Virus record (IMG/VR): IMGVR_UViG_3300028666_000022
Span: 62,001 to 126,000 of that record
Direction: 5' to 3' (one strand)
DNA: 64,000 nucleotides
Below the pieces are notes generated by a model. That model was not told the origin of the DNA and searched no databases. It saw only the letters and a list, made by a program, of their open reading frames with translations. Positions 2,824 to 36,025 of the stretch are shown here, piece by piece (position 1 is the stretch's first letter; every line of letters starts with the position of its first letter). Made by a program: the position numbers and the translations under genes.

Positions 2824-3058
2824 AGAGTATGAAAATAATTAAATTTTCTTTATTGATCTTATGTCAATCGGCTGTACTCCTACAACCTCTACCTTATCTT
2901 ACCTAAGTATTTTAAGGTTACATTTATTAGCTATTATTTTTGATTCAATACTTTCGTATTGTCTTGCTAATTTGTTATTAACTTTTATGATTTTACATTA
3001 CCAAAGTATTAATTTAGGTAATAACCACAATATATCAAAGAACGTAAAGATAAATACT
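2824..3058 (-). ncRNA. Stand-alone TnpB omegaRNA-like cassette A (promoter, boxA-like element, structured leader, scaffold; guide read from 2823 downward)
   Basis: Minus strand encodes a TnpB C-terminal-like remnant (VEVVGVQPIDIRSIKKI*). Hairpins ACCTTA/TAAGGT, GGTTGT/ACAGCC and ATTGA/TCAAT plus pseudoknot GGAGTA/TACTCT parallel the tnpB 3' end at 4082-4187. Segment 2978-3058 is identical (81 bp) to 35945-36025. Confidence 0.7.
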
Positions 3059-3185
3059 GGAAATTATGAAAAAAGTAAATAAAAAGAAGCAGAATTTATT
3101 GCCAATATTAGAGCTGCAATACAAAATGAATTAGGCGAGGATGAGTTTAACATATTAATAAAACATAATTTAAAATATTAATACT

Positions 3186-3892
3186 ATGACACAACAAGAA
3201 CTAGATGTTTTAAAAACTTACTTATCTTATGATGAAATCAAAGAGATATGTATTGAAGAATGCAGAAGATTAGTAAGAGAAGGTGTGAATAGTATCAAAC
3301 CAGATAAAAGAATTGACAATTATGAAAGAATTATTTCAAATGCTGTTCACTACTATCTTGAAACTGAAATAGATCAAATACTTGATGTTAATACAAAAGA
3401 ATTAATCAAATCAAATGTATTAAATATTTTAACAAAACCAGAATTTACAAAATATTCTATTTTTAGAACTAAAAATTCTTGGGATAATGAGGATTCTATT
3501 GGAACTAAATATCTTAAAGAAGCAGTTACAGAAAATAAAAATTATATAAAAGAAAAAGTTAAATCCGTAATTGAAGAAATTGATTTTAATAATCTTAAAG
3601 AAGATATTAAAGAATATATTCTTGAAGTTATTGATGAAAAATTTAGTAAATCACTAAAATAAACAACATTATGATTGGTATTGAATTTACATTTAATGAT
3701 GGAACAAAGGACAATTATGATCCCATTAATTTTCCTGATGATTTCGAAGAAACTAATAAAGAATATATTTTACATATGGTGTATGATTATGTAATTGAGA
3801 AATCAATAGTAAAAAGTATTCGACATTATGAATTATGCCCTATTTGTGGTCATGAATTGTATGAAGACGGTTGTCACAATTATCATGAATAA
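3186..3892 (+). CDS. Two hypothetical proteins (3186..3662; 3671..3892 with CxxC)
   Basis: ORF track. Confidence 0.6.
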
Positions 3893-4081
3893 AAAATTTT
3901 TCTAATTTATGTGGTTTATTTAAATAGTTTTAATATATTTACAAAATTTATTTTAACCTAAATAATAGAAAGGAAATTTGTGATGGAAGAAAATATTTGG
4001 AGTGAACTAAGATACGAAGAAACTGCTGAAAATATTGTTAATATTTTTGCTTGACTAACAGGTGAACTCGATGAAATTGGA
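3885..4081 (+). repeat. Diverged ~200-bp direct duplication flanking the IS607-like element (partner 6165-6359)
   Basis: The same intergenic region (atgaataaaa...tttaatatatttacaaaa...aatagaaaggaaa) and gene 5' end occur on both sides. Confidence 0.8.
3983..4081 (+). pseudogene. Truncated 5' copy of ORF 6261..6479, ending at the TnpB element right end
   Basis: MEENIWSELRYEETAENIVNIFA*LTGELDEIG vs MDENIWSELRYEETGENIINIFGWLTGELDETG; TGA at 4052-4054. Confidence 0.9.
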
Positions 4082-4190
4082 ACAGTACAAAATAATATAA
4101 TAATATTACTTCTTTATGATCGAAACCATTGGCGATACTGCAATCACCTCTATCCCATTATCAAACTCGATGTTTGGAATTGCTTTTCTT
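4082..4190 (-). ncRNA. omegaRNA scaffold overlapping the tnpB 3' end; predicted guide TCCAATTTCATCGAGTTCAC
   Basis: Hairpins ATTCCA/TGGGAT, GGTGAT/ATCGCC and ATGGT-TTCG-ATCAT; loop GCAGTA can pair with terminal TACTGT. Confidence 0.7.
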
Positions 4191-5440
4191 AATATATTTA
4201 AACTCCCGTTTAAATCTGCATTTATCAATTTCTTTGATTTTGATCTATATAAACCCCTATAAATTCTTCTACCACTAAATTTATGTTTATTAATATCATT
4301 GTCTTCAATACCAATATTATTATTTTCACATTTTTTATCTTTCTTTTTATACACTGGTATCTCATCTTCATCTATAAAACTAGCCTTACTCGTATAACTT
4401 TCTTCCTGTATTAAGACATTTATACCAAGTAATTTAGCCTTATATTCTAACATCCATATAAACCTACTGTGTGGTATGCCTACAAATTTTTGATTACTCT
4501 CCTTGCCCATATTTATCTCTTGCTTCCACTCCTTATTATTACCAATTATTAAGGTATTAATATTGTTGTCAACTAAATGATTAATAATATATCGACTTGC
4601 TTTATGCAAATAATCATCAACTTTGTTATTCCTTTTATTTGTTAAATTCTTAATTCTATTGCTTGTCCCATATTGTTGTTTTTCTCCTTTCTTATTTATA
4701 TAATGATTTAAATCTGATTTGTAATGAGCTAAATTTTTATTATAATATTGATTAATACTTTTTAATGGTTTACCATTAATAATTATTGATTTAATTACAT
4801 TACTACCTATTGTTGCTAAATTATTTAAACCCAAATCAATACTAGCATACCTATTATTATTTGGCTTTAACTCAACTTCTTTTACTTCATATAATACTTC
4901 AATTACATAATGATTACCTTTTGGTATTACTCTACATTGCTTAATATTTTTAGAATTTATTTTAGTTTTAACCCTAATATTAGTTCTCGATAATTTAACT
5001 ATATTATTTTTTAATTCTTTTTTCGATATAGCATCTAATGTATAAATCAACATAAATCTACCATTTATCTTATCTTTATAATTGGGTAATTCAGGCTTAC
5101 CTTTATATTTAGATTTATTTTTATTATAATCCTTAATAGAAGCAAAGAAAGATTTCCAATTTTTATCTAATTGCATTAGGGTTTGATTTGATATTTTTCT
5201 AGGTAATTGTATATAATCAATATCATTAGAATCAATCATTAATCTATTAATATCATAATAATTTAAATAATTAGCATGATCAACTAAACCTAATTTTTTC
5301 TCATTACTTGTTTTAATAAATTCTTGTCTGATTATATAATTAGCTTTATTGTAAAGGTTTTTACTAAGAAAACATAGTTTATCAATTTCAATAAAATATT
5401 GATTAGATTTTTTAATTATATGTTTTTCTGTTAAAATCAC
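4106..5440 (-). CDS. tnpB: RNA-guided endonuclease TnpB (IS607-associated; rearranged RuvC-II type)
   Basis: SIDLGLNNL (RuvC-I); IIGNN with downstream QEESYTSK; INADLNGSLNI (RuvC-III). Confidence 0.92.
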   Translation of the reverse strand: MILTEKHIIKKSNQYFIEIDKLCFLSKNLYNKANYIIRQEFIKTSNEKKLGLVDHANYLNYYDINRLMIDSNDIDYIQLPRKISNQTLMQLDKNWKSFFASIKDYNKNKSKYKGKPELPNYKDKINGRFMLIYTLDAISKKELKNNIVKLSRTNIRVKTKINSKNIKQCRVIPKGNHYVIEVLYEVKEVELKPNNNRYASIDLGLNNLATIGSNVIKSIIINGKPLKSINQYYNKNLAHYKSDLNHYINKKGEKQQYGTSNRIKNLTNKRNNKVDDYLHKASRYIINHLVDNNINTLIIGNNKEWKQEINMGKESNQKFVGIPHSRFIWMLEYKAKLLGINVLIQEESYTSKASFIDEDEIPVYKKKDKKCENNNIGIEDNDINKHKFSGRRIYRGLYRSKSKKLINADLNGSLNILRKAIPNIEFDNGIEVIAVSPMVSIIKK

Positions 5441-5479
5441 TTTAAATTATTAATGTTATTAAATTATATTTTACTTATT

Positions 5480-6058
5480 TTAGTTTTCAATGAATTGTTT
5501 TATTTCTTCCTTATTCTTCTTTCTCCTTAAGCCATATATCCTTTCTGAAAATGAATAAAATATACTAATTAAATCATTTAGTAAATCTTCTTTATCTTCA
5601 TTTACTTGATTTATTACTAATATTTGTTTTCCTTTTAACTTAAGTAATAATTCAATATAATTAAAACCAAATCTTGTTAATCTATCTTTATTTTCAACAA
5701 TAATCATATTCCAATCATCTCTAACCAATATTTTATTTAATTTAGGACGATTATCATTCATACCTGAAGCAATTTCTTTAATTTCATCAATAATGATATA
5801 CGCATTTTTTGTTGCAAAATCACGTATTCTATTTAATTGATTATCCAATTCTAATTTCTTGTCATTATTAGAAACTCTAGCATATAAAATTACATTGGTT
5901 TGATTATTAATTTCAGGAAATAAGGGTATTTTAACATGGTTGGTTTCATCTAAGAAAGCACCTTTAATTTTACCAGCAACAAATCTATTCCAAGCTGTTT
6001 TATAAGTAACTGAATTTTCTCTTGCATATTCGGATAATTTTTTATATATTTGTTTCAT
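5480..6058 (-). CDS. tnpA: IS607 transposase (HTH + serine recombinase)
   Basis: N-terminal HTH, ILYARVS, EIASG, VENKDRLTRFGF, FSERIYGLR. Confidence 0.92.
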   Translation of the reverse strand: MKQIYKKLSEYARENSVTYKTAWNRFVAGKIKGAFLDETNHVKIPLFPEINNQTNVILYARVSNNDKKLELDNQLNRIRDFATKNAYIIIDEIKEIASGMNDNRPKLNKILVRDDWNMIIVENKDRLTRFGFNYIELLLKLKGKQILVINQVNEDKEDLLNDLISIFYSFSERIYGLRRKKNKEEIKQFIEN

Positions 6059-6260
6059 GAATAAAATGTTTTATATTTGTATATATAAATACTATTAATG
6101 TAGAAAAAGTTTATATAAATTTCAATAATTTTACATATTAATTATAATTAGTTTAAAATATGTAATGAATAAAATTTATAATTAATGTGTTTTAATTTAA
6201 AAATTTTTAATATATTTACAAAAATTATTTTAATTTAAACAATAGAAAGGAAAGTGAGTC

Positions 6261-6479
6261 ATGGATGAGAATATTTGGTCAGAATTACGTTATGAAGAAA
6301 CTGGTGAAAATATTATTAATATTTTTGGTTGGTTAACAGGCGAACTAGATGAAACAGGAATTGCTATTATTGAAATCAATGTTTTAACTGGTTTTGTAAC
6401 TTATCTTGATGAAAGAGCTAAAGACGATTTATACGCTCAGGAAGCAGTTCAAGAAGTTTTTGATATTTACGGTTTATAA
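6261..6479 (+). CDS. Hypothetical protein (intact copy of the gene truncated at 3983-4081)
   Basis: ORF track; paralog alignment. Confidence 0.8.
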   Translation: MDENIWSELRYEETGENIINIFGWLTGELDETGIAIIEINVLTGFVTYLDERAKDDLYAQEAVQEVFDIYGL

Positions 6480-6676
6480 TAATATCTATTTATGAAAAAT
6501 TTAATTAATTTTATTTTCTTTAGATGGAGTAAGTGGGAAGTGTATATACCTAACATTACTGAAACAGTTGGATTATTTCCCGAAAAAAAAGTTGTTGTTG
6601 ATATTTACGTAAAAACAAATATCTATACAGGATTAAAAAAATATAAAAGAGTTGTTAAATATCGAATTAGGCCAGA

Positions 6677-7030
6677 ATGAAATCCCTTACTCAAGAAATT
6701 CTTAATGAATTTGTTCTTGATTTAAAGAAGAATCGATTCAAAGATATTATCAAAGATCTTAAAATAGATTTGTCTTCTAATGAAGACAATACAGAATACA
6801 TTTATCTAGGTTTAATCATTCTTAGGAAAAAAGAAAGACATAAGGGATATGGTTCATTAATCATGAAAGAAATTATATCTTTAGCAAACGAATATAATCT
6901 TCCAATTAAGTTATACTCAACAGCAGCTTATGGTTCAAAGATTGATAAACTAAATGAATTTTATAATAAACATGGTTTTGTTTTAGATAATTTAATGTTG
7001 TGTTATTTTCCAAAAATTGTAACAAAATAA
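6677..7030 (+). CDS. GNAT-family acetyltransferase
   Basis: RHKGYGS motif A; FYNKHGF motif. Confidence 0.75.
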   Translation: MKSLTQEILNEFVLDLKKNRFKDIIKDLKIDLSSNEDNTEYIYLGLIILRKKERHKGYGSLIMKEIISLANEYNLPIKLYSTAAYGSKIDKLNEFYNKHGFVLDNLMLCYFPKIVTK

Positions 7031-7993
7031 ATTAATTTTCGTATAATTTTTAATTTAAAATTAATAAATGAATAATATAAAATATATTGAACCCAATAAA
7101 AGCTTAATGGGGCGAATATTTAGATTTTTTGGTATTGAATTAAACACTAAATTCAATGATGGATATTTTCATACATTTGGTTATTCTGGAAAACAAAAAA
7201 ATAATAAAAGAGATATTATCATAATAGAAAAATTAGATGGAAATGTCATTAGTATACCTAACAATAAAAAATATTATACGTTTCAGAATAATTTTATTTA
7301 TAGTGGACACATTAAAAATATTGAAAAGACTATAGATAATAAACATAACACATTATTTTTAAATGAAAAAATAAGTGTTAATTGGGACGCATAAATTATT
7401 TTTAAAGAATTAGTAACAAATTAGATTAATTTTCGTAATATAAACTATAATCAACAAAACAATAAAATTTATGAAAAAAGAACAACAATGTAAAATATGT
7501 AATAATAAAAAACTAATTGAAGTATTGGTTATGGGAACGGATGTTGATTGGGTGGAATGCCCATATTGTTCGAATAAATCAGAATATATTAAATTTCAAA
7601 ACTCAGTTAATTAATAATCTTATGAAAGAATTAGAAATATCAATTAAGATCCTAAAGGAAGATAAAACAGAATTAGAATGTAAACTTTATTATTTCTTTA
7701 GAAATGGAAGAGTTCCAGATGATAATGAATATTATGAAATGATGGAATTATTAGAAAATTGGTCAATAATAAAATCAAATATTAAGTGTGTCGAAGATAT
7801 TCAAAAAACAATTATTAATAATATTTAGAATATGATAATTTACACTGAAGCAACAATCAACTACATGGCTAACTTGGGTTTAAACAACGAAATTCAAGTT
7901 ATTTTAGCTAATAGTGTGGTAAAAGAAACTGAAAAATTAAAGGTTAAATATGTTGTAATGAATGAAATTCCCGAAACAATTTAGTTTGAAATC

Positions 7994-8353
7994 ATGTCAA
8001 ATACGGTTTATTATATTAACACCAATATTGTTGCTAAATATCGAGAATTTAATAGAGAATCTAATCCATTTCCTATTTGGTTGGGTTTACCACTTAAAGA
8101 TGTTAAATCTTTAGAAAATGATATTAAAATAAACGGCATTGTAAACCCTTTAGAAATAATGGTTTATAAAGGTAAAACATTACTAGTTGAAGGAAATCAT
8201 AGATTATCAATTGCATTAAAACTAAAATTTAAAAAAGTCCCAATTAAATTTACTACTCCAACAAGTGATTATGATTTAAATTATTTTCAAGAAAGAAAAG
8301 AAAAATACGTTAAATTAGATAATGATTTAATAAAAATATTGGAGGTTTTATAA
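7994..8353 (+). CDS. ParB/Srx-like domain protein
   Basis: LENDIKINGIVNPL...LVEGNHRL...VPI. Confidence 0.8.
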   Translation: MSNTVYYINTNIVAKYREFNRESNPFPIWLGLPLKDVKSLENDIKINGIVNPLEIMVYKGKTLLVEGNHRLSIALKLKFKKVPIKFTTPTSDYDLNYFQERKEKYVKLDNDLIKILEVL

Positions 8354-8407
8354 CAAAAATAATTATTTTTCGTACTATATTAAATTTAAACAAATAAAAA
8401 TATTTCC

Positions 8408-9813: not shown

Positions 9814-9814
9814 T

Positions 9815-10351: not shown

Positions 10352-10570
10352 ATGAAAAAGAAGTTTAATAAAATTATGGAAGATTTAAAAAATAAAAATC
10401 TAATTGTTGTTCGAGTTAATAAAATAGAATTTGAATTAGATAATGGAGATATTTATCCTATCCCATTCGAATTAGATGTTGATGAAAATATTACTCTCGA
10501 AGAATTTCAAAAAATATTAAATGATTCAAAAGATGATATTATAAAAATACTTGATAAATATAATGAGTAA
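10352..10570 (+). CDS. Small protein upstream of tnpA, inside the element
   Basis: ORF overlapping the tnpA start. Confidence 0.6.
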   Translation: MKKKFNKIMEDLKNKNLIVVRVNKIEFELDNGDIYPIPFELDVDENITLEEFQKILNDSKDDIIKILDKYNE

Positions 10571-11189
10571 ACTATTATCATTACAAAAAGTATCAGAAAT
10601 ATTGGGTGTAACTAAGAAAACATTAAGAATATGGGATAATGATGGTAAATTAGTTAGTATTAAAACTATTGGTGGTCATAGAAGATATAAAGAAGATGAT
10701 GTTAATAAATACATCGGTGAATATGTTGAAGTTAATATTAATAATGTTTTAACATATAGTAGAGTAAGTAGTCATGAACAAAAAACCAAAGGAGATTTAG
10801 ATAGACAATCACAAAGAATAAGTGAATATTGTGCTAAGAAAAAATACAAAGTAGAATATATTATTAAAGATGTTGGTTCAGGACTATCAGATACAAGAAG
10901 TGGATTTGTTAAAATGGTTGATTTGGTAATTAAGAGAAAAATTAATAAAGTAATCATTGAAAATAAAGATAGATTAACCAGATTTCAATTTAATTTAATT
11001 AAAGTATTTTTTAATAGTTATGATGTGGAAATTGAATGTATTGAAAATACGAATATATCAAATGAAGAAGAATTTGTAAATGATATAATGATGTTAATGG
11101 CAAGTTTTTCTGGTAAATTATATGGTAAGAGAAGTGTGAAACGTAAAAAAGAATTAAAAGAACAAAAATTAAAAGATAAAAATTTTTAA
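10551..11189 (+). CDS. tnpA: IS607 transposase (MerR-like HTH + serine recombinase)
   Basis: LGVTKKTLRIWD...GGHRRY, YSRVSS, DVGSGL, ENKDRLTRF, SFSGKLYG. Confidence 0.93.
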   Translation: MINIMSKLLSLQKVSEILGVTKKTLRIWDNDGKLVSIKTIGGHRRYKEDDVNKYIGEYVEVNINNVLTYSRVSSHEQKTKGDLDRQSQRISEYCAKKKYKVEYIIKDVGSGLSDTRSGFVKMVDLVIKRKINKVIIENKDRLTRFQFNLIKVFFNSYDVEIECIENTNISNEEEFVNDIMMLMASFSGKLYGKRSVKRKKELKEQKLKDKNF

Positions 11190-11205
11190 AACGATACTAA
11201 TTATT

Positions 11206-12003
11206 ATGAAATTAATTCAGAAATATTTAAAAACCGATGATGAGATTGAATTATTAAGAGAGAGTAATTTATTAGTATCAAAAACACTTGCAGAAATTGC
11301 TAAAAATATAAAAGTTGGCGTTTCTACACTTTATCTTGATAAAATTGCTGAAGAGTTTATTATGGATAATAATGCAATACCTGCTTTTAAAGGATATAAT
11401 GGATTTCCAAATACATTATGTACATCAGTAAATGATGAAATAATTCATGGAATTCCATCTGATTATATTTTGAATGAAGGTGATATAATATCGGTTGATT
11501 GTGGTGTGATATTAAATGGATGGTATGGAGATAGTGCTTATACGTTTCCTGTTGGTAAAATTTCAAAGGAAATACTGCAATTATTGGTATATACTAAAGA
11601 ATCTCTTAAAGAAGGAATAAAAAAAGCAATCATAGGAAATAGAATTGGTGATATTTCTTATGCAGTTCAAACTAAAGTAGAAAGTGGTGGATATAGTGTT
11701 GTAAGAGAAATGGTTGGTCACGGTATTGGAAGAAATCTTCATGAAGAACCTAATATTCCAAATTATGGTAAGCAAGGAACGGGAATAAAACTTGAAAAGG
11801 GACTTGTAATATGTATTGAACCAATGATAAATCTTGGAAAAAGAGAAATGTTGTTAATGAAGGATGGATGGACAATAAAAACTGCTGATGGAAAACCTTC
11901 AGCACATTTCGAAAAAGCAATTGTGATTCACAAAGAAAAAGCAGATATATTAACAAATTTTGATTTTATTGAAAAAATTTTAGATAATAATGAAAATAAT
12001 TAG
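11206..12003 (+). CDS. map: Type I methionine aminopeptidase
   Basis: CTSVNDEIIHGIP, SVDCG, GDSAYT, GHGIG..HEEP, CIEPM, SAHFE. Confidence 0.95.
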   Translation: MKLIQKYLKTDDEIELLRESNLLVSKTLAEIAKNIKVGVSTLYLDKIAEEFIMDNNAIPAFKGYNGFPNTLCTSVNDEIIHGIPSDYILNEGDIISVDCGVILNGWYGDSAYTFPVGKISKEILQLLVYTKESLKEGIKKAIIGNRIGDISYAVQTKVESGGYSVVREMVGHGIGRNLHEEPNIPNYGKQGTGIKLEKGLVICIEPMINLGKREMLLMKDGWTIKTADGKPSAHFEKAIVIHKEKADILTNFDFIEKILDNNENN

Positions 12004-13126
12004 GTCAACTAAATGTAGTTTGAAGTTTTCTACTAAAAAGAAAATAAATGATTTGTCAACTATATTAGCAGAATATGCTAAAGTGGTTAATATTTTCATA
12101 AATTATTTTTGGTTAAATCCTGACAATACAAATAAAAATAAATTATTAAAAGAAATAGTTGATTTACCTTCAGAAACATGGTTGAGTGCAAGATTAAGAA
12201 AAGTGGCAGCAAGAGAAGCGATTGATATGATAAATGCATCTAAATTAAGATGGAAAAATAAAGCAGTAATTCCTGTTCATAAAGGAAATAGGATGTATGT
12301 TAGTTGTACCATTGCTGACTTAGTTCCTACTAAAAACACTAATTATAAAACTGAAGAAAGTCTTAGATTCGATGCTTGGTTGCATATACAATCAATTGGA
12401 AATAAAATGATAATGGATTTACCAATTAAATATCATAAACATTTTAATAAGTATAATAATATAGGTAAAAGATTAAACTCATACATAATAACAAAGAATT
12501 ACGTTCAGTTTAGTTTTGAAATTAATACACAACCTAAGAAAGAAGGTAAGAAATGTATTGGTATAGATACTGGTATTAACGCACTTGCTAGTTTGAATAA
12601 TGGTAATCAATATGGAAAAGATATTAAGGAATGTATTGAAAGAGTAAAAAGATGTCAACAAAAATCAAAAGGATGGTATGTTGCTAAAAGAGCATTAAAA
12701 CAGCGTATTGATGAAGTAGTAAAAGAATTAATGATAAAAGAGAATCCTGATTTAATAGTTGTGGAACGACTAAAGAATATGGGAGTTAAATCAAAAGCCA
12801 AACGTTTATTGGCTAAAAATATTAGACGTTCTATTGGAACATGGAACTGGAAGTATTGGTTAAAAAGGTTAGAAGGATATTGCGAAATTAACCGTGTTAG
12901 TTTTCGTTCGGTATTACCTTATTATACCAGTACAACTTGTCCTGTATGTGGTCATTCTGATAGGGGAAACCGAAATGGAAAGATATTCTTATGTCTTAAA
13001 TGTGAACACAAAGACAATGCTGATATAAATGCAGGAAAGAATATTTTAAATCGGTTTCTTATGGGACTCTACGGTGTCCATTACAAAGAATGTGAAGATG
13101 TACAATTTTGTGCAACTTTAGTTTAA
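11990..13126 (+). CDS. tnpB: RNA-guided endonuclease TnpB
   Basis: GIDTG, VVERL, TSTTCPVC...CLKC zinc ribbon, NADINAGKNI. Confidence 0.9.
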   Translation: MKIIRSTKCSLKFSTKKKINDLSTILAEYAKVVNIFINYFWLNPDNTNKNKLLKEIVDLPSETWLSARLRKVAAREAIDMINASKLRWKNKAVIPVHKGNRMYVSCTIADLVPTKNTNYKTEESLRFDAWLHIQSIGNKMIMDLPIKYHKHFNKYNNIGKRLNSYIITKNYVQFSFEINTQPKKEGKKCIGIDTGINALASLNNGNQYGKDIKECIERVKRCQQKSKGWYVAKRALKQRIDEVVKELMIKENPDLIVVERLKNMGVKSKAKRLLAKNIRRSIGTWNWKYWLKRLEGYCEINRVSFRSVLPYYTSTTCPVCGHSDRGNRNGKIFLCLKCEHKDNADINAGKNILNRFLMGLYGVHYKECEDVQFCATLV

Positions 13127-16055: not shown

Positions 16056-16150
16056 CTAATGTTAAGAATTTTAAACGTTTCATAGATTGTGCCTATTGTT
16101 ATAGGTCTTATTTTATCTCCACGTCTGTTATCGTTAGTCCCTAACGATTG
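16027..16150 (-). ncRNA. IS200/IS605-type omegaRNA and right end; predicted guide AAATGCCTTTGTTTCTAAAC
   Basis: Ends GGTAGTTCAC; hairpins ATCGTTAG/CTAACGAT, CCTAT/ATAGG and TTCTTAAC/GTTAAGAA; GTGGA/TTCAC pseudoknot. Confidence 0.75.
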
Positions 16151-17354
16151 TAATATTATCTTTGGTATTAATAGTTTGATTTTCATTAATTAAATCATTA
16201 TTAATACCACTCTCTTTTACTTTTCTTCCTTCTTTTAAAATATTTAAGGCTGCATTTAGATCCCTGTCATGTTTCATCCCACATTTAGGACAAATCCACT
16301 CTCTTACCTTAAGAGTCAAGTTCTGGTTAATATACCCACATTCATTACATGCCTTACTTGAAGGATAAAAACGGTTTATTTTAGTGATAGTTTTATCACT
16401 CCAATTAGCTTTATATTCAAGCATGTTAATGAATTTGCCCCATGAGGCATCTGATATTGACTTATTTAATCCTGACTTAGCTGACTGACCATTAGGTAGG
16501 TATTTACCATTATCATCCTGTTTTGGTTTACAAGATTTTAACATACCTTTAATATTCAAGTCTTCTAAATAAATTTGATCATATTTTTTTATTAAATCTG
16601 TACTGATCTTATGTAAATTATCTACACGAGAATTGGTTATCTTCTTATGTATTCTCGCTACCTTTAATCTTTGTTTTTCATATCTATTACTTCCTTTAGT
16701 TTTTCTACTTAAATGTTGCTGTCCCCTTTTTAGCTTTTTCGCATATGTCTTTGTATATTTATTGTTTTTATATTTATAACCATCTGATGTAATAATTAGA
16801 TCCTTAATTCCCAAATCAATACCAACCTCTTTACCAGTTTTAGGTAACTTAACATGAGATGTTTCAACCAAAATAGAAACAAAATATTCATTAGTTGGTG
16901 TTTTAGAAACAGTGCATTGATGTATTTCACCTTTAAATTTTCTGTCAATTATAATTGGTATTCCTTCTTTAAATTTAGGTATATGTAATTTATTTTTTAT
17001 TAACTTTGTAAATTGTGGCACACAAAAACTATTTCTATCATGCTTACTCTTAAATCTTGGAAACCTTGTTCTTCCCTTAAAGAAACCATTATAAGCTCCA
17101 TCTAAACATTTAAGAGATTGTTGCATGGATTGAGAATTAGTTTCATTTAACCAAGTAAAATCATTATTTTGTTTTAGTGTGGTGAGAGATTTACAATTAT
17201 CAACATAACTTAAACCTTGTTTATTTGTTTTGTATTCTTCAATCCTTTCGTTTAAATAATAGTTATAAACAAACCTAATACACCCAAAATGTTTATTTAA
17301 TAAGATCATTTGGTTATTATCAGGTTTTAGTTTATATTTGTAAGCTTTTAACAT
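16134..17354 (-). CDS. tnpB: RNA-guided endonuclease TnpB (IS200/IS605 OrfB type), no adjacent transposase
   Basis: MLKAYKYKL..HFGCIRFVYN, GIDLG, YLEDL, PSSKACNEC...WICPKC, HDRDLNAA. Confidence 0.95.
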   Translation of the reverse strand: MLKAYKYKLKPDNNQMILLNKHFGCIRFVYNYYLNERIEEYKTNKQGLSYVDNCKSLTTLKQNNDFTWLNETNSQSMQQSLKCLDGAYNGFFKGRTRFPRFKSKHDRNSFCVPQFTKLIKNKLHIPKFKEGIPIIIDRKFKGEIHQCTVSKTPTNEYFVSILVETSHVKLPKTGKEVGIDLGIKDLIITSDGYKYKNNKYTKTYAKKLKRGQQHLSRKTKGSNRYEKQRLKVARIHKKITNSRVDNLHKISTDLIKKYDQIYLEDLNIKGMLKSCKPKQDDNGKYLPNGQSAKSGLNKSISDASWGKFINMLEYKANWSDKTITKINRFYPSSKACNECGYINQNLTLKVREWICPKCGMKHDRDLNAALNILKEGRKVKESGINNDLINENQTINTKDNITIVRD

Positions 17355-29600: not shown

Positions 29601-29632
29601 AGTAAAGTATGAATTAATATTCATACTTTACT
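29601..29632 (+). terminator. Intrinsic terminator
   Basis: agtaaagtatgaat/attcatactttact followed by a T-run. Confidence 0.7.
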
Positions 29633-29870
29633 TTTTTATAACTAATTAAAATCTACTAAAATACGTTAGTTGTTTTTTGTTTAACTAACAAACATAATGT
29701 TTTATCACAATCAAACATTTAATTTACATAATTCCCACCCAGTTTTTATTATAATATGTTGATTTACAAATGATTATAAAATAAATTAGTAATCAAATTT
29801 TGCCATTGTCTTAATTTTCAGGTATTTATAGTTAAATAAGAAACATTATAAATAATAAAAAATTAAAACA

Positions 29871-31154
29871 ATGGCACAATTTATTAAAGTCGAATGGCAA
29901 GCAAGTCCATCACCAATTTCTGGGTATAACATATATCGTGGTAATTCTGATGGCAATGTATCTAATACACCCCTTAACAATTTTCCAATTTTAACGTCAT
30001 TTTATGAGGACTACACAATATTTCCCGGTCAAACATATTGTTATGTAGTTACTGCTGTGTTAAATGGAGTGGAAAGTACTAGTTCATTACAAATATTTAC
30101 TGAACCAATTGCATTTATTAACTCACCATCACCTTTAGCATTAAATGCTTTTGGAGGATTTGGGTTATTAGCTGCTTCTACAATCACTAATGTTCCGGGA
30201 ACAGAATCAAGTGTTACAGGTGATGTTGGTGTATATCCGGGTTCATCTATTACTGGATTTGAAAATGTAAGAGTTTCGGGTTCATTTCACTTAGCTGATT
30301 ATGTTGCTGGTTATGCACAAAATTCATTAACAAACGCATTTAATGTTGGTATGGGTATTACTGGTGCAACAACAATACCAGCAGAATTAGGTGGACTTAG
30401 ATTAACTCCGGGTGTTTATTCAAATGTCACTTCAGTTCAAATTACTGGTACGTTAGTATTAGATGGTCAAGGAAATCCTAATGCAGCTTGGGTTTTTCAA
30501 ATAGGTTCAACATTAACAACTGCAGCAGGAAATAGTCATGTAGTTCTAGTTGGTGGTGCTCAAGCCACAAACGTAACTTGGTTAGTTGGTTCTTCTGCAA
30601 CATTAGACGTTGATACATTTTTTGCTGGTAATATTATTGCATATGCATCAATAACTGTTAATACCAACGCTTGTGTTAATGGTAGATTAGGTGCAAGAAC
30701 AGGTGCAATTACATTGGATGATAATGCTGTTATTGTTTATGGTGCATGTCATGAGGCTTTACCAGCATCACCTCCAAATACACCTCCATCACCACCTTCT
30801 GCACCAACAGGTATTATTATTGTTGATAGAAATGCTGATGGTGTTAATAACAATGGACCAGTACTACCAATTGTATTTACATCTGAAATTACTGATATTA
30901 CATCTACTAGTGCTAATGGTGGTGGAAACGTAACATTTGATGGTTACACACCAATTGTTTCACGTGGTGTAGCATTTGCTACTTCACCAAGTCCAACTGT
31001 ATTAAGTACAAACAATGGTATTGGTGCAGGTATTTTCGGTAGTTCTATTACTGAATTATTGTCAGATACAAGATATTATGTGAGAGCATATGCGATAAAC
31101 TCTGTTGGAATTTCTTATGGAGATAATGTAAGTTTCGTAACATTGCCAGCATAA
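29871..31154 (+). CDS. DUF3494 ice-binding-like protein with N- and C-terminal FN3-like domains
   Basis: FGLLAASTITN, GDVG, LTPGVY, LDGQGNPNAAWVFQIGSTLTT, GGAQATNVTW; GYNIYR and YYVRAYAIN FN3-like motifs. Confidence 0.9.
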   Translation: MAQFIKVEWQASPSPISGYNIYRGNSDGNVSNTPLNNFPILTSFYEDYTIFPGQTYCYVVTAVLNGVESTSSLQIFTEPIAFINSPSPLALNAFGGFGLLAASTITNVPGTESSVTGDVGVYPGSSITGFENVRVSGSFHLADYVAGYAQNSLTNAFNVGMGITGATTIPAELGGLRLTPGVYSNVTSVQITGTLVLDGQGNPNAAWVFQIGSTLTTAAGNSHVVLVGGAQATNVTWLVGSSATLDVDTFFAGNIIAYASITVNTNACVNGRLGARTGAITLDDNAVIVYGACHEALPASPPNTPPSPPSAPTGIIIVDRNADGVNNNGPVLPIVFTSEITDITSTSANGGGNVTFDGYTPIVSRGVAFATSPSPTVLSTNNGIGAGIFGSSITELLSDTRYYVRAYAINSVGISYGDNVSFVTLPA

Positions 31155-31163
31155 TAAAATTTG

Positions 31164-31203
31164 AACCATCAAAACTAAATAATTAATAATAGTTTTGATG
31201 GTT
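31164..31203 (+). terminator. Inverted repeat, possible terminator
   Basis: aaccatcaaaacta / tagttttgatggtt. Confidence 0.6.
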
Positions 31204-31242
31204 TATATATAAAAATAAAATTAAATAAAAATAAATAAAATT

Positions 31243-32322
31243 ATGAGTTCAATATTTAGAAAATTAAAAATAGCAAATAATGCAACTGTCACAGCTACAT
31301 TATTTAATAAACTAATGGATGCATTTGACAATGGTGTAGATGGTGTTTTTTTCACAACTCCTATTCGTTATTCTACTAATTATGGTATAACATCTCATTC
31401 AAGTGGTGGTCAAACACTAGCAACAATATTAACATCAGAAATAAATAATGTAAGTCTTGTTAGAGCAAATGGTGATAGTGTAAAATTAGTATCAGCAAGA
31501 CCGGGTTATTCTATTACAGTAAAAAATAATGGTCAACATAATCTATTGGTTTATCCATATGAATTAGATTTTATTGATGATGGATTAGTAAATGTGCCAA
31601 TAACAATGTTACCTGAAGAAACGAGAGTATTTAGATCAATTAGTGATTCGCGTTGGGAAAGTATGTCTGATAAAATTCAAAATAGTATATCTACACCATC
31701 GGCATATAATTTACATTTTGCTTCAACATTTGCGGTTCTTACTAACGGTACAATTACAATTAGTAATCCAAAATTAATAATACCTGATGGGGATTCAGGT
31801 GAAACTACGTTAACACCATTAACAGGTATAAAATTTATAAATGGTTCTAACAAAGGATTAAGTACAAGTGCAGTAACTAGTGCAAATAATTTATATAATG
31901 AATTAGTTACTTTAAGTGGTCATACTTTCGGTGCAGTAAATTTAGAAACTGTAAATGTTGGTTATGGTACAGGGAGATTTGTACCCGGTGTTTATATTGG
32001 CTCAACAGGTATAGTAACATCTGCTTCACAAACAATTACATTGGTTGGTGATGGAGATTATGTATTCATAAGTCAAGGTGCAATGACATTTGGTGCAACA
32101 AACACAATTTTATTAACACATGGTGCTCAAGCAAATAGAGTATTTTGGGTATCTGTTGGTGCAATCACCACTGGTGCAGTAAATGTTGTTAAAGGAAACT
32201 TTATAACCACTGCAGCAATTAATATTGGTGCAACAAATGATATAGAAGGAAGACTTTTATCAACAATGACAGCAGCAATCACATTTGATGGTACAGCGAC
32301 TAACCTTTATTTATCAAAATAA
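31243..32322 (+). CDS. Second DUF3494 ice-binding-like protein with a tail-fibre-like N-terminus
   Basis: FAVLT, VPGVY, YVFIS, GAQANRVFW, KGNFI, EGRLLS. Confidence 0.8.
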   Translation: MSSIFRKLKIANNATVTATLFNKLMDAFDNGVDGVFFTTPIRYSTNYGITSHSSGGQTLATILTSEINNVSLVRANGDSVKLVSARPGYSITVKNNGQHNLLVYPYELDFIDDGLVNVPITMLPEETRVFRSISDSRWESMSDKIQNSISTPSAYNLHFASTFAVLTNGTITISNPKLIIPDGDSGETTLTPLTGIKFINGSNKGLSTSAVTSANNLYNELVTLSGHTFGAVNLETVNVGYGTGRFVPGVYIGSTGIVTSASQTITLVGDGDYVFISQGAMTFGATNTILLTHGAQANRVFWVSVGAITTGAVNVVKGNFITTAAINIGATNDIEGRLLSTMTAAITFDGTATNLYLSK

Positions 32323-32685
32323 CAATTTATTAATGTTTTTTATCATGTAATAATATGAAAAATAGTAAACCCTTAAAAATAAAAGACCAGAACGATATTA
32401 TACTCTGGTCTTTTATTACAAAACGTAAAAAATTAGAAATACTAAATGATTCAATAGAATTAATTCGAAAAATTGGTAAAAATAAACCTAAAGATTTGAA
32501 TTTAATAAAAAAAATAATAAATCTTCATAATGAATATAGATTTCCATTGGTTCAACTTATGGACACTACACAAAAAAGTATTGATATTGCATATCAATTT
32601 TTAGTTTTTTTAACTAAATGAAAATTAATCAATAGATATTTATAAGTAATTATTAATATCATATCTACTATAATAAACTACTAAA

Positions 32686-34125
32686 ATGAATGATATTATA
32701 ATTGATTATAAGAAACAACTTAACATTAGTCTATCTAGTAATATTACAACAAAAACATTATCGTGTGTTTGTACATGGACTACTATTGGCTCAACAGTAC
32801 TGACTATTTTTCGTACAACATTATCTAATGATATTCCAAAGGTAATTATACCAACTCCAATCATAAATAACGATAGACAATTAAATTATTTAAAAGTCAC
32901 TAATTATGATAGTGTTAGTGCAATGGTTTTAATTAACGTAGGTAATGTTGATACCATAGGTTATAATATGAATATTATTAGTGTTTTATTATCACCCAAT
33001 GAGATATTATCTTATAATATCAAAGATGGCTTTTATATTATAGATTATAGGGGTAAAATAAAAAATATTCAAAATACCATTGAGATAACTTCTATACCAA
33101 TAAATACTGGAACTACAACCAATTCTATATTAGATTATTATACTAAGCCACAAACAAATTCATTGTTACTTCAAAAATCTAATACAGGTCATACACATTC
33201 TCAATATTTAACAGGATTAACAATTAATTACTCACTAATTAATCTATCTGGTATTACACATGTATTAAGTGGATATACACGTGGTTGGGTTACTGGATTA
33301 GATGCGTTTGGTCGTTCACAACAAAATTTTCGAGGTCAAAATTCGATATTAACTCTTGGTGGTTGGCAAGCTGATGGTAGTTCAACAATTTCAAGTGAAG
33401 GTGCTGTTTTTTATGGAGTAAACGCTAAAGGTATTCTAAGTGATGCTGAAGGTGGTTATGCTAGAATTAAACCAAACCGTTTTGGATTGGGTAATATTAT
33501 TACGGGTATCGATGGTTCAAACTTATTTTATTATTTTAGAGTGGATGATATTGAATTATATTTAAAAGATAATAATAATATTAAAACCTTTGCTGTAGAT
33601 AGAGCCAGTGGTGTAGTATCAGCTAATATGTTTCGAGGTGATATTGATTGGAATTACGTTACAACAAAACCTGATTTTTTGAGTAGTTATGGTTCATTAT
33701 ATGAACATAATTCAACTGGAACTACAATTACTGTATCAAATACTGAAACCAAAGGATGGATAACAGCATCAAGTTCTAGCAATCATTTAACTACCTTAAC
33801 AAAAAATATTACTTCTGATAGAATATCTATTTTAAGCGGTGGTTCTGGTACATATCAGATAAATGTTAATATAAATAACAGTTATTCAAATAATACTCCA
33901 CTTTATTGGATGGGTATATATAAAAATAATAATTTAATAACACAATTACAAACTTATTTGAGTGCAACAAACACAAATGATAGGTATAATTCGAGTATTA
34001 ATTCAATTATTTCTAGTGTTTCAGTAGGTGATTTTTTTGACATAAGATTTAATAGTAATAATCCCACGCCAAGTAATATTATCATATATAATATATCATT
34101 TAATATGAATCGGATAGGTACTTAA
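32686..34125 (+). CDS. Putative structural or fibre protein
   Basis: Thr/Ser/Asn/Gly-rich and beta-rich; YYTKxQ and HTH fibre-like repeats; lies next to the DUF3494 genes. Confidence 0.45.
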   Translation: MNDIIIDYKKQLNISLSSNITTKTLSCVCTWTTIGSTVLTIFRTTLSNDIPKVIIPTPIINNDRQLNYLKVTNYDSVSAMVLINVGNVDTIGYNMNIISVLLSPNEILSYNIKDGFYIIDYRGKIKNIQNTIEITSIPINTGTTTNSILDYYTKPQTNSLLLQKSNTGHTHSQYLTGLTINYSLINLSGITHVLSGYTRGWVTGLDAFGRSQQNFRGQNSILTLGGWQADGSSTISSEGAVFYGVNAKGILSDAEGGYARIKPNRFGLGNIITGIDGSNLFYYFRVDDIELYLKDNNNIKTFAVDRASGVVSANMFRGDIDWNYVTTKPDFLSSYGSLYEHNSTGTTITVSNTETKGWITASSSSNHLTTLTKNITSDRISILSGGSGTYQINVNINNSYSNNTPLYWMGIYKNNNLITQLQTYLSATNTNDRYNSSINSIISSVSVGDFFDIRFNSNNPTPSNIIIYNISFNMNRIGT

Positions 34126-34167
34126 AAAATAATTTATGATATTTTTAGATAAAAAAATTTTCAATAT

Positions 34168-34707
34168 ATGATATTAGCAATAAGAAATATGAAAGGAACT
34201 GCATGTATTATGTATGTGAAAAATGTTTTTAAAAAATTACATTTACACTATATCTCGATTGAACTTGGTAAAATTGAAACTATTGAAGATTTAGACGATA
34301 AAACATTATATAAGTTAAATGCCCTTCTAAAAGAAGGTGAACTTGAAATAATAGATAATAAAGAAATAACTATAGTAAAACAAATAAAATTAATCATATT
34401 TAATTTGATACAAAATAATAGATCATTAAACAATACTATATCTGTTTTAATTAGTAAAAAACTAAATAAAAAATATAGATATTTATCCAAAATATTTACA
34501 ATACAATGCGGTATTAATATTAACGAATATATTAAACAAGTAAAAGTAGAGAAAATAAAAGAATATCTTAAAGAAGATAAGTTAAAGATTTCTGAAATTT
34601 CTACTAAAATGCATTTTAGTAGTTCATCACAATTATCACATATTTTTAAAAAAACAACAAATATAACCCCCACACAATTTAAGAAATTATATTTCAATAA
34701 AAAATAA
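34168..34707 (+). CDS. AraC-family transcriptional regulator
   Basis: YRYLSKIF...KISEISTKMHFSSSSQLSHIFKKTTNITPTQF. Confidence 0.88.
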   Translation: MILAIRNMKGTACIMYVKNVFKKLHLHYISIELGKIETIEDLDDKTLYKLNALLKEGELEIIDNKEITIVKQIKLIIFNLIQNNRSLNNTISVLISKKLNKKYRYLSKIFTIQCGININEYIKQVKVEKIKEYLKEDKLKISEISTKMHFSSSSQLSHIFKKTTNITPTQFKKLYFNKK

Positions 34708-34771
34708 ATTTCATTATTTTGTAACAAATTCAAATCTTTTGCGTAATATATCATAACTTAAAAATATTGTC

Positions 34772-35770
34772 ATGAAAAAGATTTTAATTATATTATCAGT
34801 TCTTTTGTTTACATTTACTGGATTTTCACAATCAAGTATATTTCTAAACAAAATTTCTGATACTGAATTATCCCAAGCATATACAACAACCTTTTATGAA
34901 GGTCATCAAAGAAAATATAATAAAACCATTGAAGATTTTATTCAAGAATTTATTCAAGAATATGGTAAAGATGAATTAAATCTAGTTCTTTCTAAAATAG
35001 AAGATAATACACTTGACGATTATCTTAAATCTATTGATGATAAAGAATTAAATTTTGAAATAATTGCACTTAATTACGTTCTATTGAATAAACTTTCATT
35101 TGTTTCAAATGGTAAAATTTTTGTACTTACTTATGAACCAATAAAAAGTAGAAAATCATTTGATAGGGACTTAGATATTATTAGTGAAAAAAATTTATAT
35201 CTTTATCGTAGAGATGATGATGGTTGGAAAAAAGCATCTGATTTAATTAGAGTTGATTTCTTTTCTGATGTTTCGAGTAGAGAAGTAGATTATCATACTA
35301 CACATTTCAATGATGGTGAAGAAGTATTTTCTCCATATAGGTTGGGTTTCGGTATTGTTAAAAAGACTTCAAATAATTGGGTTTACATTACTTTTAAAAC
35401 AATATCTTGGCATTCTAATGTTGGTTATCAGAATTATAATTCAATATTAGTTTTAGTTCCCAAAGATAATAAAGAATATAATATATCTTTATTTGAACCA
35501 GAAAATAAGATTGGTAAAATAATTAAAAGATATCCTCTAAAGGTTTATAATTATAGTAATCAAATTTGGAATGAATATTTAAAAGACATAAATCTACCAG
35601 TATTATATGGTTTAAGTAAAATAGAATATGTTGAAATAGATAATGGTTTAACAATAAATTATTTCGATGGTAATAAAAATAAACCAATTACTGCGGGAAC
35701 ATTAAAATTCGAAAAGATTGATAATCAGATTATTTGTAGTGGTACAATTAAAATGAATAAAATTAAATAA
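34772..35770 (+). CDS. Secreted hypothetical protein
   Basis: Signal peptide MKKILIILSVLLFTFTGFSQ; promoter copy at 34721. Confidence 0.7.
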   Translation: MKKILIILSVLLFTFTGFSQSSIFLNKISDTELSQAYTTTFYEGHQRKYNKTIEDFIQEFIQEYGKDELNLVLSKIEDNTLDDYLKSIDDKELNFEIIALNYVLLNKLSFVSNGKIFVLTYEPIKSRKSFDRDLDIISEKNLYLYRRDDDGWKKASDLIRVDFFSDVSSREVDYHTTHFNDGEEVFSPYRLGFGIVKKTSNNWVYITFKTISWHSNVGYQNYNSILVLVPKDNKEYNISLFEPENKIGKIIKRYPLKVYNYSNQIWNEYLKDINLPVLYGLSKIEYVEIDNGLTINYFDGNKNKPITAGTLKFEKIDNQIICSGTIKMNKIK

Positions 35771-35783
35771 ATCTCACACATGG

Positions 35784-36025
35784 ACAGTACGTAATAACAT
35801 ATAATTTATATTAACTCTTTATGGTCGAAACCATTGGCGATACTGCAATCACCTCTATTCCATTATCAAACCGATGTTTGGAATTGCTTTTATTAGCTAT
35901 TATTTTTAATTCAACATCTAAAAGATATTGTCTTGCTAAATTGTTTAACTTTTATGATTTTACATTACCAAAGTATTAATTTAGGTAATAACCACAATAT
36001 ATCAAAGAACGTAAAGATAAATACT
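35784..36025 (-). ncRNA. Stand-alone TnpB omegaRNA cassette B; predicted guide CCATGTGTGAGATTTATTTA
   Basis: 35816-35891 matches 4111-4187 (2 substitutions + 1 loop indel); same ACAGTAC end; leader shared with cassette A. Confidence 0.8.

What the first reader, a model, noticed from the sequence alone, without database searches (positions are those of the whole stretch)
2824..36025. Candidate phage RNA-guided system: TnpB nucleases with separate, modular guide-RNA genes
SEEN: three copies of one omegaRNA scaffold, one in cis at the tnpB 3' end (4082-4187) and two with no protein gene (2824-2920, 35784-35891). All keep the same three hairpins and a terminal pseudoknot with compensatory changes (GCAGTA/TACTGT vs GGAGTA/TACTCT; ATTCCA/TGGAAT vs ACCTTA/TAAGGT). 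The two protein-free copies are fused to a common promoter and leader that is absent from the tnpA-tnpB element. Each copy has a different 3' flank. KNOWN: TnpB uses the sequence 3' of the omegaRNA pseudoknot as its guide. INFERENCE: the phage may have uncoupled guide from nuclease, giving dispersed, promoter-driven guide genes loaded in trans, possibly against competing phages or host DNA.
Basis: partly seen in the sequence, partly recalled or inferred. Interest (0 to 1): 0.9.

Follow-up and report, generated by a model that had tools for sequence, protein, structure and literature searches.

The report
Solo TnpB guide-RNA cassettes in phage
A 340-kb soil phage carries one complete IS607-type transposon with an RNA-guided TnpB nuclease plus two short protein-less copies of that nuclease's guide-RNA scaffold. 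These are most likely stripped-down transposon derivatives that borrow the nuclease, not a newly evolved set of guide genes aimed at foreign DNA.

Summary
A covariance model finds exactly three copies of one ~105-nt RNA scaffold, all on the minus strand. One lies in cis at the 3' end of tnpB (4082-4187). Two have no protein gene (2824-2925, 35784-35891). The fold is four hairpins plus a pseudoknot and is supported by covariation across 20 family members from large phage contigs.

The shared "promoter and leader" has no demonstrable promoter: its sigma-70-like match is no better than chance and it lacks the phage's own promoter motif. Its outer ~50 nt resemble the left end of the resident IS607. 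An alternative match is to the antisense of a tnpB fragment.

The guides are simply the adjacent phage DNA. They have no second match in the window and only chance-level matches in GenBank phages.

A related 363-kb phage carries a classical left-end + right-end mini-IS with the same kind of solo scaffold. Protein-less omegaRNA elements loaded in trans are already described in the literature.

Best reading: these are non-autonomous IS607 derivatives whose omegaRNAs are loaded in trans by the resident TnpB and act on cassette-free alleles (homing or retention). The empty-site test could not be run because no close relative of the phage exists in any collection searched.

The parts
4082..4187 (-). 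omegaRNA scaffold A, in cis; overlaps the 3' end of tnpB and ends in TACTGT at the right end of the IS
   Evidence: R1 104.9 bits; fold; right-end boundary from homology with L016/L002
4062..4081 (-). guide-encoding flank of copy A (length assumed ~20 nt); lies in a truncated copy of small gene X
4106..5440 (-). tnpB (444 aa). D202, E346/E347 and D409 are invariant in 14 homologues; the RuvC-II Glu is C-terminally shifted and there is no Cys zinc finger
5480..6058 (-). tnpA, serine recombinase (Resolvase domain)
6059..6190 (-). left end of the IS607-type element; boundary approximate, inferred from where homology with the L016 and L002 elements stops
2824..2925 (-). solo scaffold B (B-type pseudoknot GGAGTA/TACTCT); coding frame destroyed; nearest cis relatives are L016 second copy and L057
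   Evidence: R1 76.2 bits
2804..2823 (-). guide-encoding flank of B; intergenic DNA starting 10 nt after the stop codon of ORF 2240..2794
35784..35891 (-). solo scaffold C (A-type), 96% identical to A over 77 nt; a 1-nt deletion breaks the tnpB frame
   Evidence: R1 109.4 bits
35892..36050 (-). shared 5' module of cassette C; outer 50 nt are 80% identical to the left end of the resident IS (window 6129..6079)
35764..35783 (-). guide-encoding flank of C; covers the stop codon (35768-35770) of ORF 34772..35770
3880..4085 (+). left copy of a ~205-bp diverged direct repeat (86%) flanking the IS: promoter region plus the first 35 codons of gene X, with an in-frame stop (pseudogene 3980..4054)
6160..6365 (+). 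right copy of that repeat; runs into the intact gene X (6261..6479)

Best explanation
Cassettes B and C are protein-less, non-autonomous derivatives of IS607-type elements from the same phage-borne TnpB clade as the complete element at 4082-6190. Each keeps an intact right end, which is the omegaRNA scaffold, and a short 5' module of IS origin.

Inferred mechanism: each cassette is transcribed on the minus strand. The RNA is loaded in trans by the resident TnpB; this fits well for C and is uncertain for B. The RNA carries as its guide the 16-20 nt of phage DNA next to the scaffold end. Such a complex cannot cut its own locus, because the scaffold end occupies the TAM position. It would cut the same locus in a co-infecting relative, or in a revertant, that lacks the cassette. 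Recombinational repair would then copy the cassette in. This is the known TnpB homing/retention logic, used by a guide-only passenger.

Shown: the identity, structure and family of the scaffolds; the absence of a protein gene; the IS-derived context.
Inferred: transcription, trans-loading, cleavage and homing.
For: - Exactly three scaffold copies in the window, with a conserved four-hairpin + pseudoknot fold and covariation.
- In 15 other phage contigs the same scaffold sits at the 3' end of a TnpB gene, usually with a serine recombinase.
- C is 96% identical to A over 77 nt.
- B alone has three otherwise invariant hairpin-1 pairs changed on both sides while its reading frame is destroyed.
- TnpB keeps D202, E346/347 and D409.
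- Precedent found here: the 363-kb phage that carries the full element L006 also carries L038/L097. That copy is 53 nt of left end (91%) joined to the last 155 nt of the IS (98%), with a new flank.
- The outer 50 nt of cassette C are 80% identical to the left end of the resident IS.
- Distant relatives have only 13-55-nt spacers at the corresponding gene junctions, so both cassettes look like insertions.
- Literature: PATE-like elements encode omegaRNAs that must be used in trans by TnpB (PMC10055086). 36% of RAGATH-18 RNAs are not next to an IS607 TnpB (PMC11061315).
Against: - No transcript data: no RNA run holds this DNA.
- No cassette-free allele was found, either in four sister metagenomes or in a second assembly. 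No close relative of the phage exists in any collection searched.
- The cassettes lack the outer ~60 nt of the resident left end, and the inner ~100 nt of the 5' module match nothing. Mobilisation by TnpA is therefore doubtful.
- The two cassettes share the 5' module (~95% over 116 nt) but have scaffolds of two different subtypes. A simple deletion history does not explain this.
- No cognate B-type TnpB was seen in the 340-kb contig.
- The TAM is unknown.
Confidence: 0.55

Rival explanations
1. The cassettes are inert relics. They are decayed, rearranged remains of old IS607 insertions, with no RNA function and no present activity.
For: - The 5' module looks like scrambled IS debris. It matches the left-end block and, about equally well, the antisense of a tnpB fragment of L057/L016.
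- There is no convincing promoter.
- Only two copies exist, and only in this genome.
- C could be so recent that its intact fold says nothing about selection.
Against: - B has lost the reading frame yet keeps every helix and the pseudoknot. Three of its pairs have double changes that occur in no cis copy.
- The same odd architecture sits at two unrelated loci, so it was propagated after it formed.
- Both cassettes have the same orientation and the same position just after a gene end.
Confidence: 0.25
2. One reading: the phage has uncoupled guide from nuclease and keeps promoter-driven guide genes whose spacers are directed against competing phages or host DNA.
For: - The scaffolds are intact and protein-free, and share an upstream module that is ~95% identical over 116 nt.
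- Each cassette plus exactly 12 nt of 'guide' is bracketed by the same short direct repeat (TTTATTT[AA]). The first 12 guide bases may therefore have been imported with the cassette rather than being local DNA.
Against: - The guide DNA is contiguous with the neighbouring phage gene ends; C covers a stop codon.
- There is no second match in the window for the 20-mers or 12-mers.
- GenBank phages give only chance-level hits, E >= 0.4.
- The promoter is not supported.
- No further cassettes exist anywhere in IMG/VR, JGI metagenomes or GTDB genomes by pattern.
Confidence: 0.1
3. Regulatory use. The cassette RNAs, with or without TnpB, act as antisense or TldR-like repressors of the convergent neighbouring genes, or the hairpins serve as terminators for the plus-strand genes upstream.
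For: - Both cassettes lie 10-30 nt after the end of a plus-strand gene and are antisense to it.
- Domesticated TnpB relatives that repress transcription are known (PMC10705468, listed).
Against: - TnpB keeps its catalytic residues.
- No terminator-like site was detected.
- The guide matches only its own template, which lacks a TAM position.
Confidence: 0.05

Closest known systems
IS607-family TnpB with right-end guide RNA (ISFba1-type reRNA/RAGATH-18, PMC11061315; CboIStron TnpB, bioRxiv 10.1101/2023.11.20.567912)
   Same: - Serine-recombinase tnpA plus tnpB.
- The guide RNA scaffold overlaps the tnpB 3' end, contains a pseudoknot and stops at the transposon right end.
- The guide is read from the flank.
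- The right-end terminus resembles the left-flank motif: in the B-type elements GTCT abuts the left end while the right end terminates in CTCT. This parallels TGGG/TCGG in CboIStron.
   Different: - No match to RAGATH-18 or any Rfam family.
- The scaffold is only ~105 nt.
- The ends carry no GG dinucleotide and no G-rich TAM.
- The TnpB has a shifted RuvC-II Glu and no Cys zinc finger.
- The family was found only in large phage contigs, not in 185,579 reference genomes by pattern.
PATE-like protein-less IS200/IS605 elements that encode omegaRNAs (Meers et al., PMC10055086)
   Same: They are minimal elements without protein genes. They keep the omegaRNA-bearing end, and that RNA must be used in trans by a TnpB encoded elsewhere.
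   Different: - Those are IS605-type (HUH transposase) with both ends intact and many copies per genome.
- Here the parent is IS607-type and there are only two copies.
- The left end is at best partial.
- The two copies combine one 5' module with two scaffold subtypes.
Mini-IS607 in a 363-kb phage
   Same: It is a solo scaffold of the same RNA family, in a huge phage that also carries the complete element, and it has a new flank/guide.
   Different: That copy is a clean left-end (53 nt) + right-end (155 nt) deletion derivative of the resident IS. Cassettes B and C have a 158-nt 5' module that is mostly unassignable.
Free-standing homing endonuclease genes of T-even phages (Seg, Mob; reviewed in PMC13565253)
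   Same: Proposed function only: an intergenic selfish insert that causes cleavage of the insert-free allele of a co-infecting relative and is copied in by repair.
   Different: Recognition would be by RNA guide, and the nuclease is supplied in trans from another locus. Nothing of this was tested here.
Virus-borne mini-CRISPR arrays / solitary repeat units (from my own knowledge, not checked here)
   Different: Those spacers match other viruses. No foreign match was found for these guides.

Membership tests
IS607-family TnpA/TnpB element (copy A) | Serine recombinase TnpA next to TnpB on the same strand | tested here: met
   Resolvase domain E=2.9e-17; OrfB_IS605 E=3.9e-21; TNB E=4.6e-8
IS607-family TnpA/TnpB element (copy A) | RuvC catalytic triad in TnpB | tested here: met
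   D202, E346/E347 and D409 are invariant in 14 homologues down to 53% identity. This rests on motifs only; activity was not tested.
IS607-family TnpA/TnpB element (copy A) | Structured guide RNA scaffold overlapping the tnpB 3' end and ending at the right end | tested here: met
   Covariation on 20 sequences; right-end boundary from three elements in different contexts
IS607-family TnpA/TnpB element (copy A) | GG core dinucleotide at the ends / G-rich TAM (PMC13565253; 10.1101/2023.11.20.567912) | tested here: not met
   Right ends terminate in TACTGT or TACTCT. Left flanks of B-type relatives end in GTCT. There is no GG at either junction.
RAGATH-18-derived reRNA | Match to the Rfam RAGATH-18 model | tested here: not met
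   No hit at gathering threshold or at E<=10
Non-autonomous mini-IS with omegaRNA (PATE/MITE-like) | No protein gene; right end with intact omegaRNA retained | tested here: met
   Open frames ending in scaffolds B and C are only 19 and 46 codons; R1 scores 76 and 109 bits
Non-autonomous mini-IS with omegaRNA (PATE/MITE-like) | Left end recognisable by the cognate transposase | tested here: inconclusive
   Outer 50 nt of C are 80% identical to the inner left-end block of the resident IS (z=5.0, 1/1000); B is weaker (z 1.7-3.2). The outer ~60 nt of the left end are missing. A rival antisense-tnpB match covers the same bases.
Non-autonomous mini-IS with omegaRNA (PATE/MITE-like) | Precise empty sites in related genomes, matching the guide and preceded by a TAM | not testable with these tools
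   No close relative exists in GenBank phages, IMG/VR or the protein collection. Sister samples carry the same arrangement.
   No second match in the window; chance-level hits only in GenBank phages. Host and co-occurring phage genomes were not searched.
   One conserved 9/12 sigma-70-like site; site counts are not above shuffles (20 vs 16.0+-3.7; 7 vs 8.4+-3.2). The phage's conserved promoter motif is absent. No RNA data.
TldR-like nuclease-dead TnpB regulators | Loss of RuvC catalytic residues | tested here: not met
   Catalytic residues are retained

The most novel reading that the evidence does not exclude
The cassettes are portable guide units. Each moved together with the first 12 nt of its guide: cassette + 12 nt is bracketed by the same 7-9-nt direct repeat in both copies. 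The complete IS is likewise bracketed by a ~205-bp repeat, and the L002 element has a similar flanking repeat that was seen by eye only. The guide would then be partly uncoupled from the insertion site. One 5' module has been recombined with two scaffold subtypes. This would be a natural intermediate between transposon-bound omegaRNAs and free guide genes in a phage.
Probability: 0.1. Interest if true: 0.8.

Novelty: new variant of a known kind. Interest (0 to 1): 0.45.

Why it matters
TnpB is the ancestor of Cas12. How guides became separated from the nuclease gene is an open step in that history. This window gives a concrete natural case in a huge phage: one active-looking TnpB and two guide-RNA scaffolds that survive without a protein gene. 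One of them shows compensatory evolution after losing its reading frame. If the cassettes are loaded in trans, they are ~260-bp guide-only homing elements, which would be relevant to competition between co-infecting phages.

The RNA family itself is compact at ~105 nt. It is not in Rfam and does not follow the GG/G-rich TAM rule of described IS607 TnpBs, so it may interest people who look for small editors. The idea of protein-less omegaRNA elements used in trans is already published, so this is an instructive variant rather than a new kind of system.

Tried and rejected
- Rfam, at gathering threshold and at E<=10: no family for the scaffold.
- Close relatives of the phage for an empty-site test: none found. 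Searched GenBank phages by DNA, IMG/VR via two flanking proteins and the 5.8-billion protein collection (best 40-54% identity). Contexts of the distant homologues show only short spacers.
- Read laying on four sister rhizosphere metagenomes: same arrangement, no joint skipping a cassette or the IS. The one 'goes back' joint is simply copy C.
- RNA runs: none hold this DNA.
- Second assembly of the phage (339,750 bp): identical over 13.4 kb.
- More cassettes: an exact 23-mer of the shared module occurs only twice in IMG/VR, both in this contig. Scaffold patterns in JGI metagenomes and GTDB genomes gave only cis copies or GC-rich chance hits.
- Left end of a B-type IS, to compare with the shared module: both available contigs end inside that tnpB.
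- 'The IS carries a replacement 5' part of its target gene': rejected, because homology among three related elements stops at ~6165-6193, not at 6365.
- 'The leader is one long inverted tnpB fragment': weakened. Only the outer ~47 nt are significant on their own; the inner 100 nt are not.
- Flanking genes of B and C are not paralogous, so there was no segmental duplication.
- TAM for the A-type TnpB: could not be defined from three left flanks.
- PDB sequence search for TnpB: only one weak hit.
Full report
**Source and setting.** The window is part of IMGVR_UViG_3300028666_000022, also recorded as Ga0265336_10000007. This is a 339,898-bp phage contig from a rhizosphere metagenome with 25% G+C. 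The window corresponds to about contig positions 62,001-126,000. A second assembly of 339,750 bp is identical over 13.4 kb around the finding.

**The observation.** Alignment of the three regions on the minus strand shows one scaffold in three copies.
- A 25-nt degenerate core pattern hits only these three places, with 0 expected.
- Covariance model R1 was built from eight family members. Run without filters, it scores C at 109 bits, A at 105 bits and B at 76 bits. Nothing else in 64 kb exceeds 17 bits.
- Copy A (4082-4187) overlaps the end of tnpB (4106..5440; OrfB_IS605 and Cas12f-TNB domains). tnpB follows a serine-recombinase tnpA (5480..6058).
- Copies B (2824-2925) and C (35784-35891) have no tnpB. 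The open frames ending in them are 19 and 46 codons.

**The RNA family.** The same scaffold lies at the 3' end of TnpB genes in 15 other large phage contigs: L002, L016 (two copies), L005, L006/L095, L007/L043, L050, L080, L061, L044, L057, L092, L053, L056 and L059. A serine recombinase is usually upstream.
- No true hit occurred in one genome per species of GTDB; the eight pattern matches there are GC-rich chance hits.
- Every member folds into four hairpins, with a 3' tail complementary to the loop of hairpin 2.
- On a model-fitted alignment of 20 members, 89.8% of cells pair, against 35-48% with slid partners. 24 of 36 pairs change on both sides. The covariation score is 0.417 against 0.169 in shuffles (0/500).
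- The diagnostic pseudoknot pair is G-C in 13, C-G in 5 and G-U in 2.
- There are two subtypes: A-type (GCAGUA/UACUGU) and B-type (GGAGUA/UACUCU). Rfam has no matching family.

**The nuclease.** TnpB 4106..5440 belongs to a very large family: at least 7,999 proteins at E<=1e-30.
- D202 (SIDLG), E346/E347 (EESYTSK) and D409 (NAD) are invariant among 14 homologues.
- The canonical RuvC-II position is Gly. This matches the C-terminally shifted glutamate described for some TnpB clades (10.1101/2023.08.09.552727).
- I infer an active nuclease. This was not tested.

**The complete element.** Homology with the L016 and L002 elements runs from window 4081 to about 6164-6193. The IS is therefore about 2.1 kb.
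- It is flanked by a ~205-bp direct repeat of 86% identity (3880-4085 and 6160-6365). The repeat holds the promoter region and first 35 codons of small gene X.
- The left copy carries a stop (3980..4054). The right copy continues into the intact gene 6261..6479.
- Guide A therefore matches the pseudogene copy and differs from the intact paralogue at seed positions. IS607 elements are not known to make target duplications.
- Possible origins are an insertion into one of two tandem paralogues followed by an adjacent deletion, or integration of a circle carrying right-flank DNA by homologous recombination. I could not decide between them.

Positions 2926-3083 and 35892-36050 are ~95% identical over a 116-nt aligned core, while the scaffolds beside them are only ~60% alike. 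An exact 23-mer of the module occurs nowhere else in IMG/VR.
- *Promoter evidence is weak.* One conserved TTGATA-16-TAAATT site scores 9/12, in regions where such sites are no more frequent than in shuffles. The phage's own conserved motif, GTAACAAAAT-N11-CGTATAAT, has 9 copies against 0.47 expected, and none is near a cassette on that strand.
- *First origin match.* The outer 50 nt of C (36059..36011) align at 80% with the left end of the resident IS at 71-21 nt upstream of the tnpA start. The aligned region includes a block conserved in the left ends of A, L016 and L002 (z=5.0, 1/1000 shuffles). L002 gives z=4.2; B is weaker.
- *Second origin match.* Overlapping bases also match the antisense strand of tnpB in L057 and L016, at 249-294 nt upstream of their scaffolds. 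The scores are z=7.0 over 150 nt with lenient scoring and z=4-5 for the outer 47 nt alone. The inner 100 nt are not significant on their own.
- Many comparisons were made, so each match is suggestive only. Either way the module looks IS-derived rather than a purpose-built promoter. The statement that it is absent from the tnpA-tnpB element is not correct for its outer part.

**Are the cassettes kept as RNA genes?** C is too close to A to tell: 96% over 77 nt, with a diverged hairpin 4. B is informative.
- Its frame is broken by a stop.
- Three hairpin-1 pairs that are invariant in the 19 other members, where they encode Ile-Pro and Gly-Ile of TnpB, are changed on both sides in B alone. Pairing is preserved.
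- That pattern is what selection on RNA structure after loss of coding would produce.
- No B-type TnpB was seen in this contig. The B-type core pattern hits only cassette B there. No second TnpB of >=51% identity comes from a 339,898-bp contig.
- B would therefore have to use the A-type TnpB. Whether it can is open.

**The guides.** The 20 nt after each scaffold end are local phage DNA.
- C covers the stop codon of ORF 34772..35770. B begins 10 nt after the stop of ORF 2240..2794.
- None of the guides has a second match in the window at up to 3 mismatches.
- GenBank phages give only E>=0.4 hits.
- Distant relatives of the flanking genes (40-54% identity) have spacers of 13-55 nt at the corresponding junctions. 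The flanking genes of B and C are unrelated to each other. Both cassettes are therefore insertions at independent sites.

**An unexplained regularity.** On the minus strand each cassette begins with TTTATTT(A/AA). The same motif recurs exactly 12 nt after the scaffold end, at 36042-36050 and 35763-35771 for C, and at 3076-3083 and 2805-2811 for B.
- The motif's frequency is 0.0014 per position.
- Collapsing the repeat in C would restore a ~25-nt spacer after the stop codon.
- The L002 element appears to have a similar flanking repeat: a ~13-nt motif outside its left end and again about 30 nt past its right end. I saw this by eye and did not test it.
- This may mean that these elements integrate together with a piece of right-flank DNA. 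It is the only observation that favours a partly portable guide. The two 12-mers have no other match in the window.

**Precedents.**
- The 363-kb phage that carries the complete element L006/L095 also carries L038, which is identical in L097. This copy is 53 nt of left end (91%) fused to the last 155 nt of the IS (98%), with a different flank. It is a textbook mini-IS with a solo omegaRNA.
- Meers et al. state that PATE elements often encode omegaRNAs that must be used in trans by TnpB from other elements (PMC10055086).
- Ren et al. report that only 64% of RAGATH-18 RNAs lie next to an IS607 TnpB (PMC11061315).
- A 2026 review frames TnpB systems as composite homing endonucleases, including homing into co-infecting phages (PMC13565253).
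- I found no paper on phage TnpB with solo guide cassettes.

**Verdict.** The sequence features are real and well supported. The most economical reading is non-autonomous IS607 derivatives that retain a functional omegaRNA and depend on the resident TnpB. Their guides serve homing or retention at their own loci.

It is not excluded, because expression, the TAM, the host and the co-occurring phages could not be examined.

Three features go beyond the ordinary case: the shared, mostly unassignable 5' module joined to two scaffold subtypes; the lack of a cognate B-type TnpB; and the 12-nt-offset direct repeats.

Noticed in passing
window 3880-4085 and 6160-6365: A ~205-bp direct repeat (86% identity) brackets the IS607 element. 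It holds the promoter plus the first 35 codons of small gene X. The left copy is a pseudogene with an in-frame stop; the right copy is the intact gene 6261..6479. IS607 is not known to make target duplications.
   Followed up: partly
window 36042-36050 / 35763-35771 and 3076-3083 / 2805-2811: Each solo cassette plus exactly 12 nt of its 'guide' is bracketed by the direct repeat TTTATTT(A/AA) on the minus strand. The motif frequency is 0.0014 per position. L002 appears to show a similar ~13-nt repeat 30 nt past its right end (seen by eye, not tested).
   Followed up: partly
window 10551-13126 (+): A second IS607-like unit: serine recombinase 10551..11189, an ORF with a Peptidase_M24 hit 11206..12003 (from the gene table of L108), and a 378-aa TnpB 11990..13126. 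This is a possible cargo-carrying IS.
   Followed up: no
window 16134-17354 (-): A third TnpB (406 aa) with HTH_OrfB_IS605, OrfB_IS605 and TNB domains. No transposase was noted nearby. Its 3' region is unrelated to the scaffold studied here.
   Followed up: no
window 958, 7019, 7413, 34721 (+); 23214, 23959, 27672, 29233, 58044 (-): A conserved promoter-like motif, GTAACAAAAT-N11-CGTATAAT, occurs 9 times against 0.47 expected, oriented with the local genes. It is probably a phage promoter class.
   Followed up: partly
L006, L007, L050, L061, L044, L097 left junctions: In B-type relatives the left end is always preceded by GTCT, while the right end terminates in CTCT. This is a likely TAM/core pair that replaces the GG rule of described IS607 elements.
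   Followed up: partly
L097 8188-8378 (= L038 1565-1666): A mini-IS607 (53-nt left end + 155-nt right end) lies in a 363-kb phage, in a region that looks like a tRNA gene cluster. The left flank reads like the 5' half of a tRNA.
   Followed up: partly
L016 10744-10849, L057 11599-11704, L105: Three contigs from one rhizosphere study end inside the same B-type tnpB. This is typical of an assembly break at a multi-copy element. That TnpB is ~61% identical to the window's TnpB, and its scaffold is the closest relative of cassette B.
   Followed up: partly
window 59530-60459 and 46669-47082: There are tandem coding repeats: five ~189-nt units inside ORF 59182..60468 (DUF4379/DUF723 zinc-finger-like hits) and 45-nt units inside ORF 46207..47124.
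   Followed up: no
window 29871-31154 (+) and 42582-42654 (-): An ORF has a strong Ice_binding domain hit (E=7e-52) plus fn3. A tRNA gene is also present (Rfam, 53 bits).
   Followed up: no
L037 (299-kb phage contig), 246-4643: A distant relative of this phage carries two serine recombinases and two TnpB genes within 4.5 kb, next to the homologue of ORF 34772..35770. IS607/TnpB elements seem to be common in this group of huge phages.
   Followed up: no
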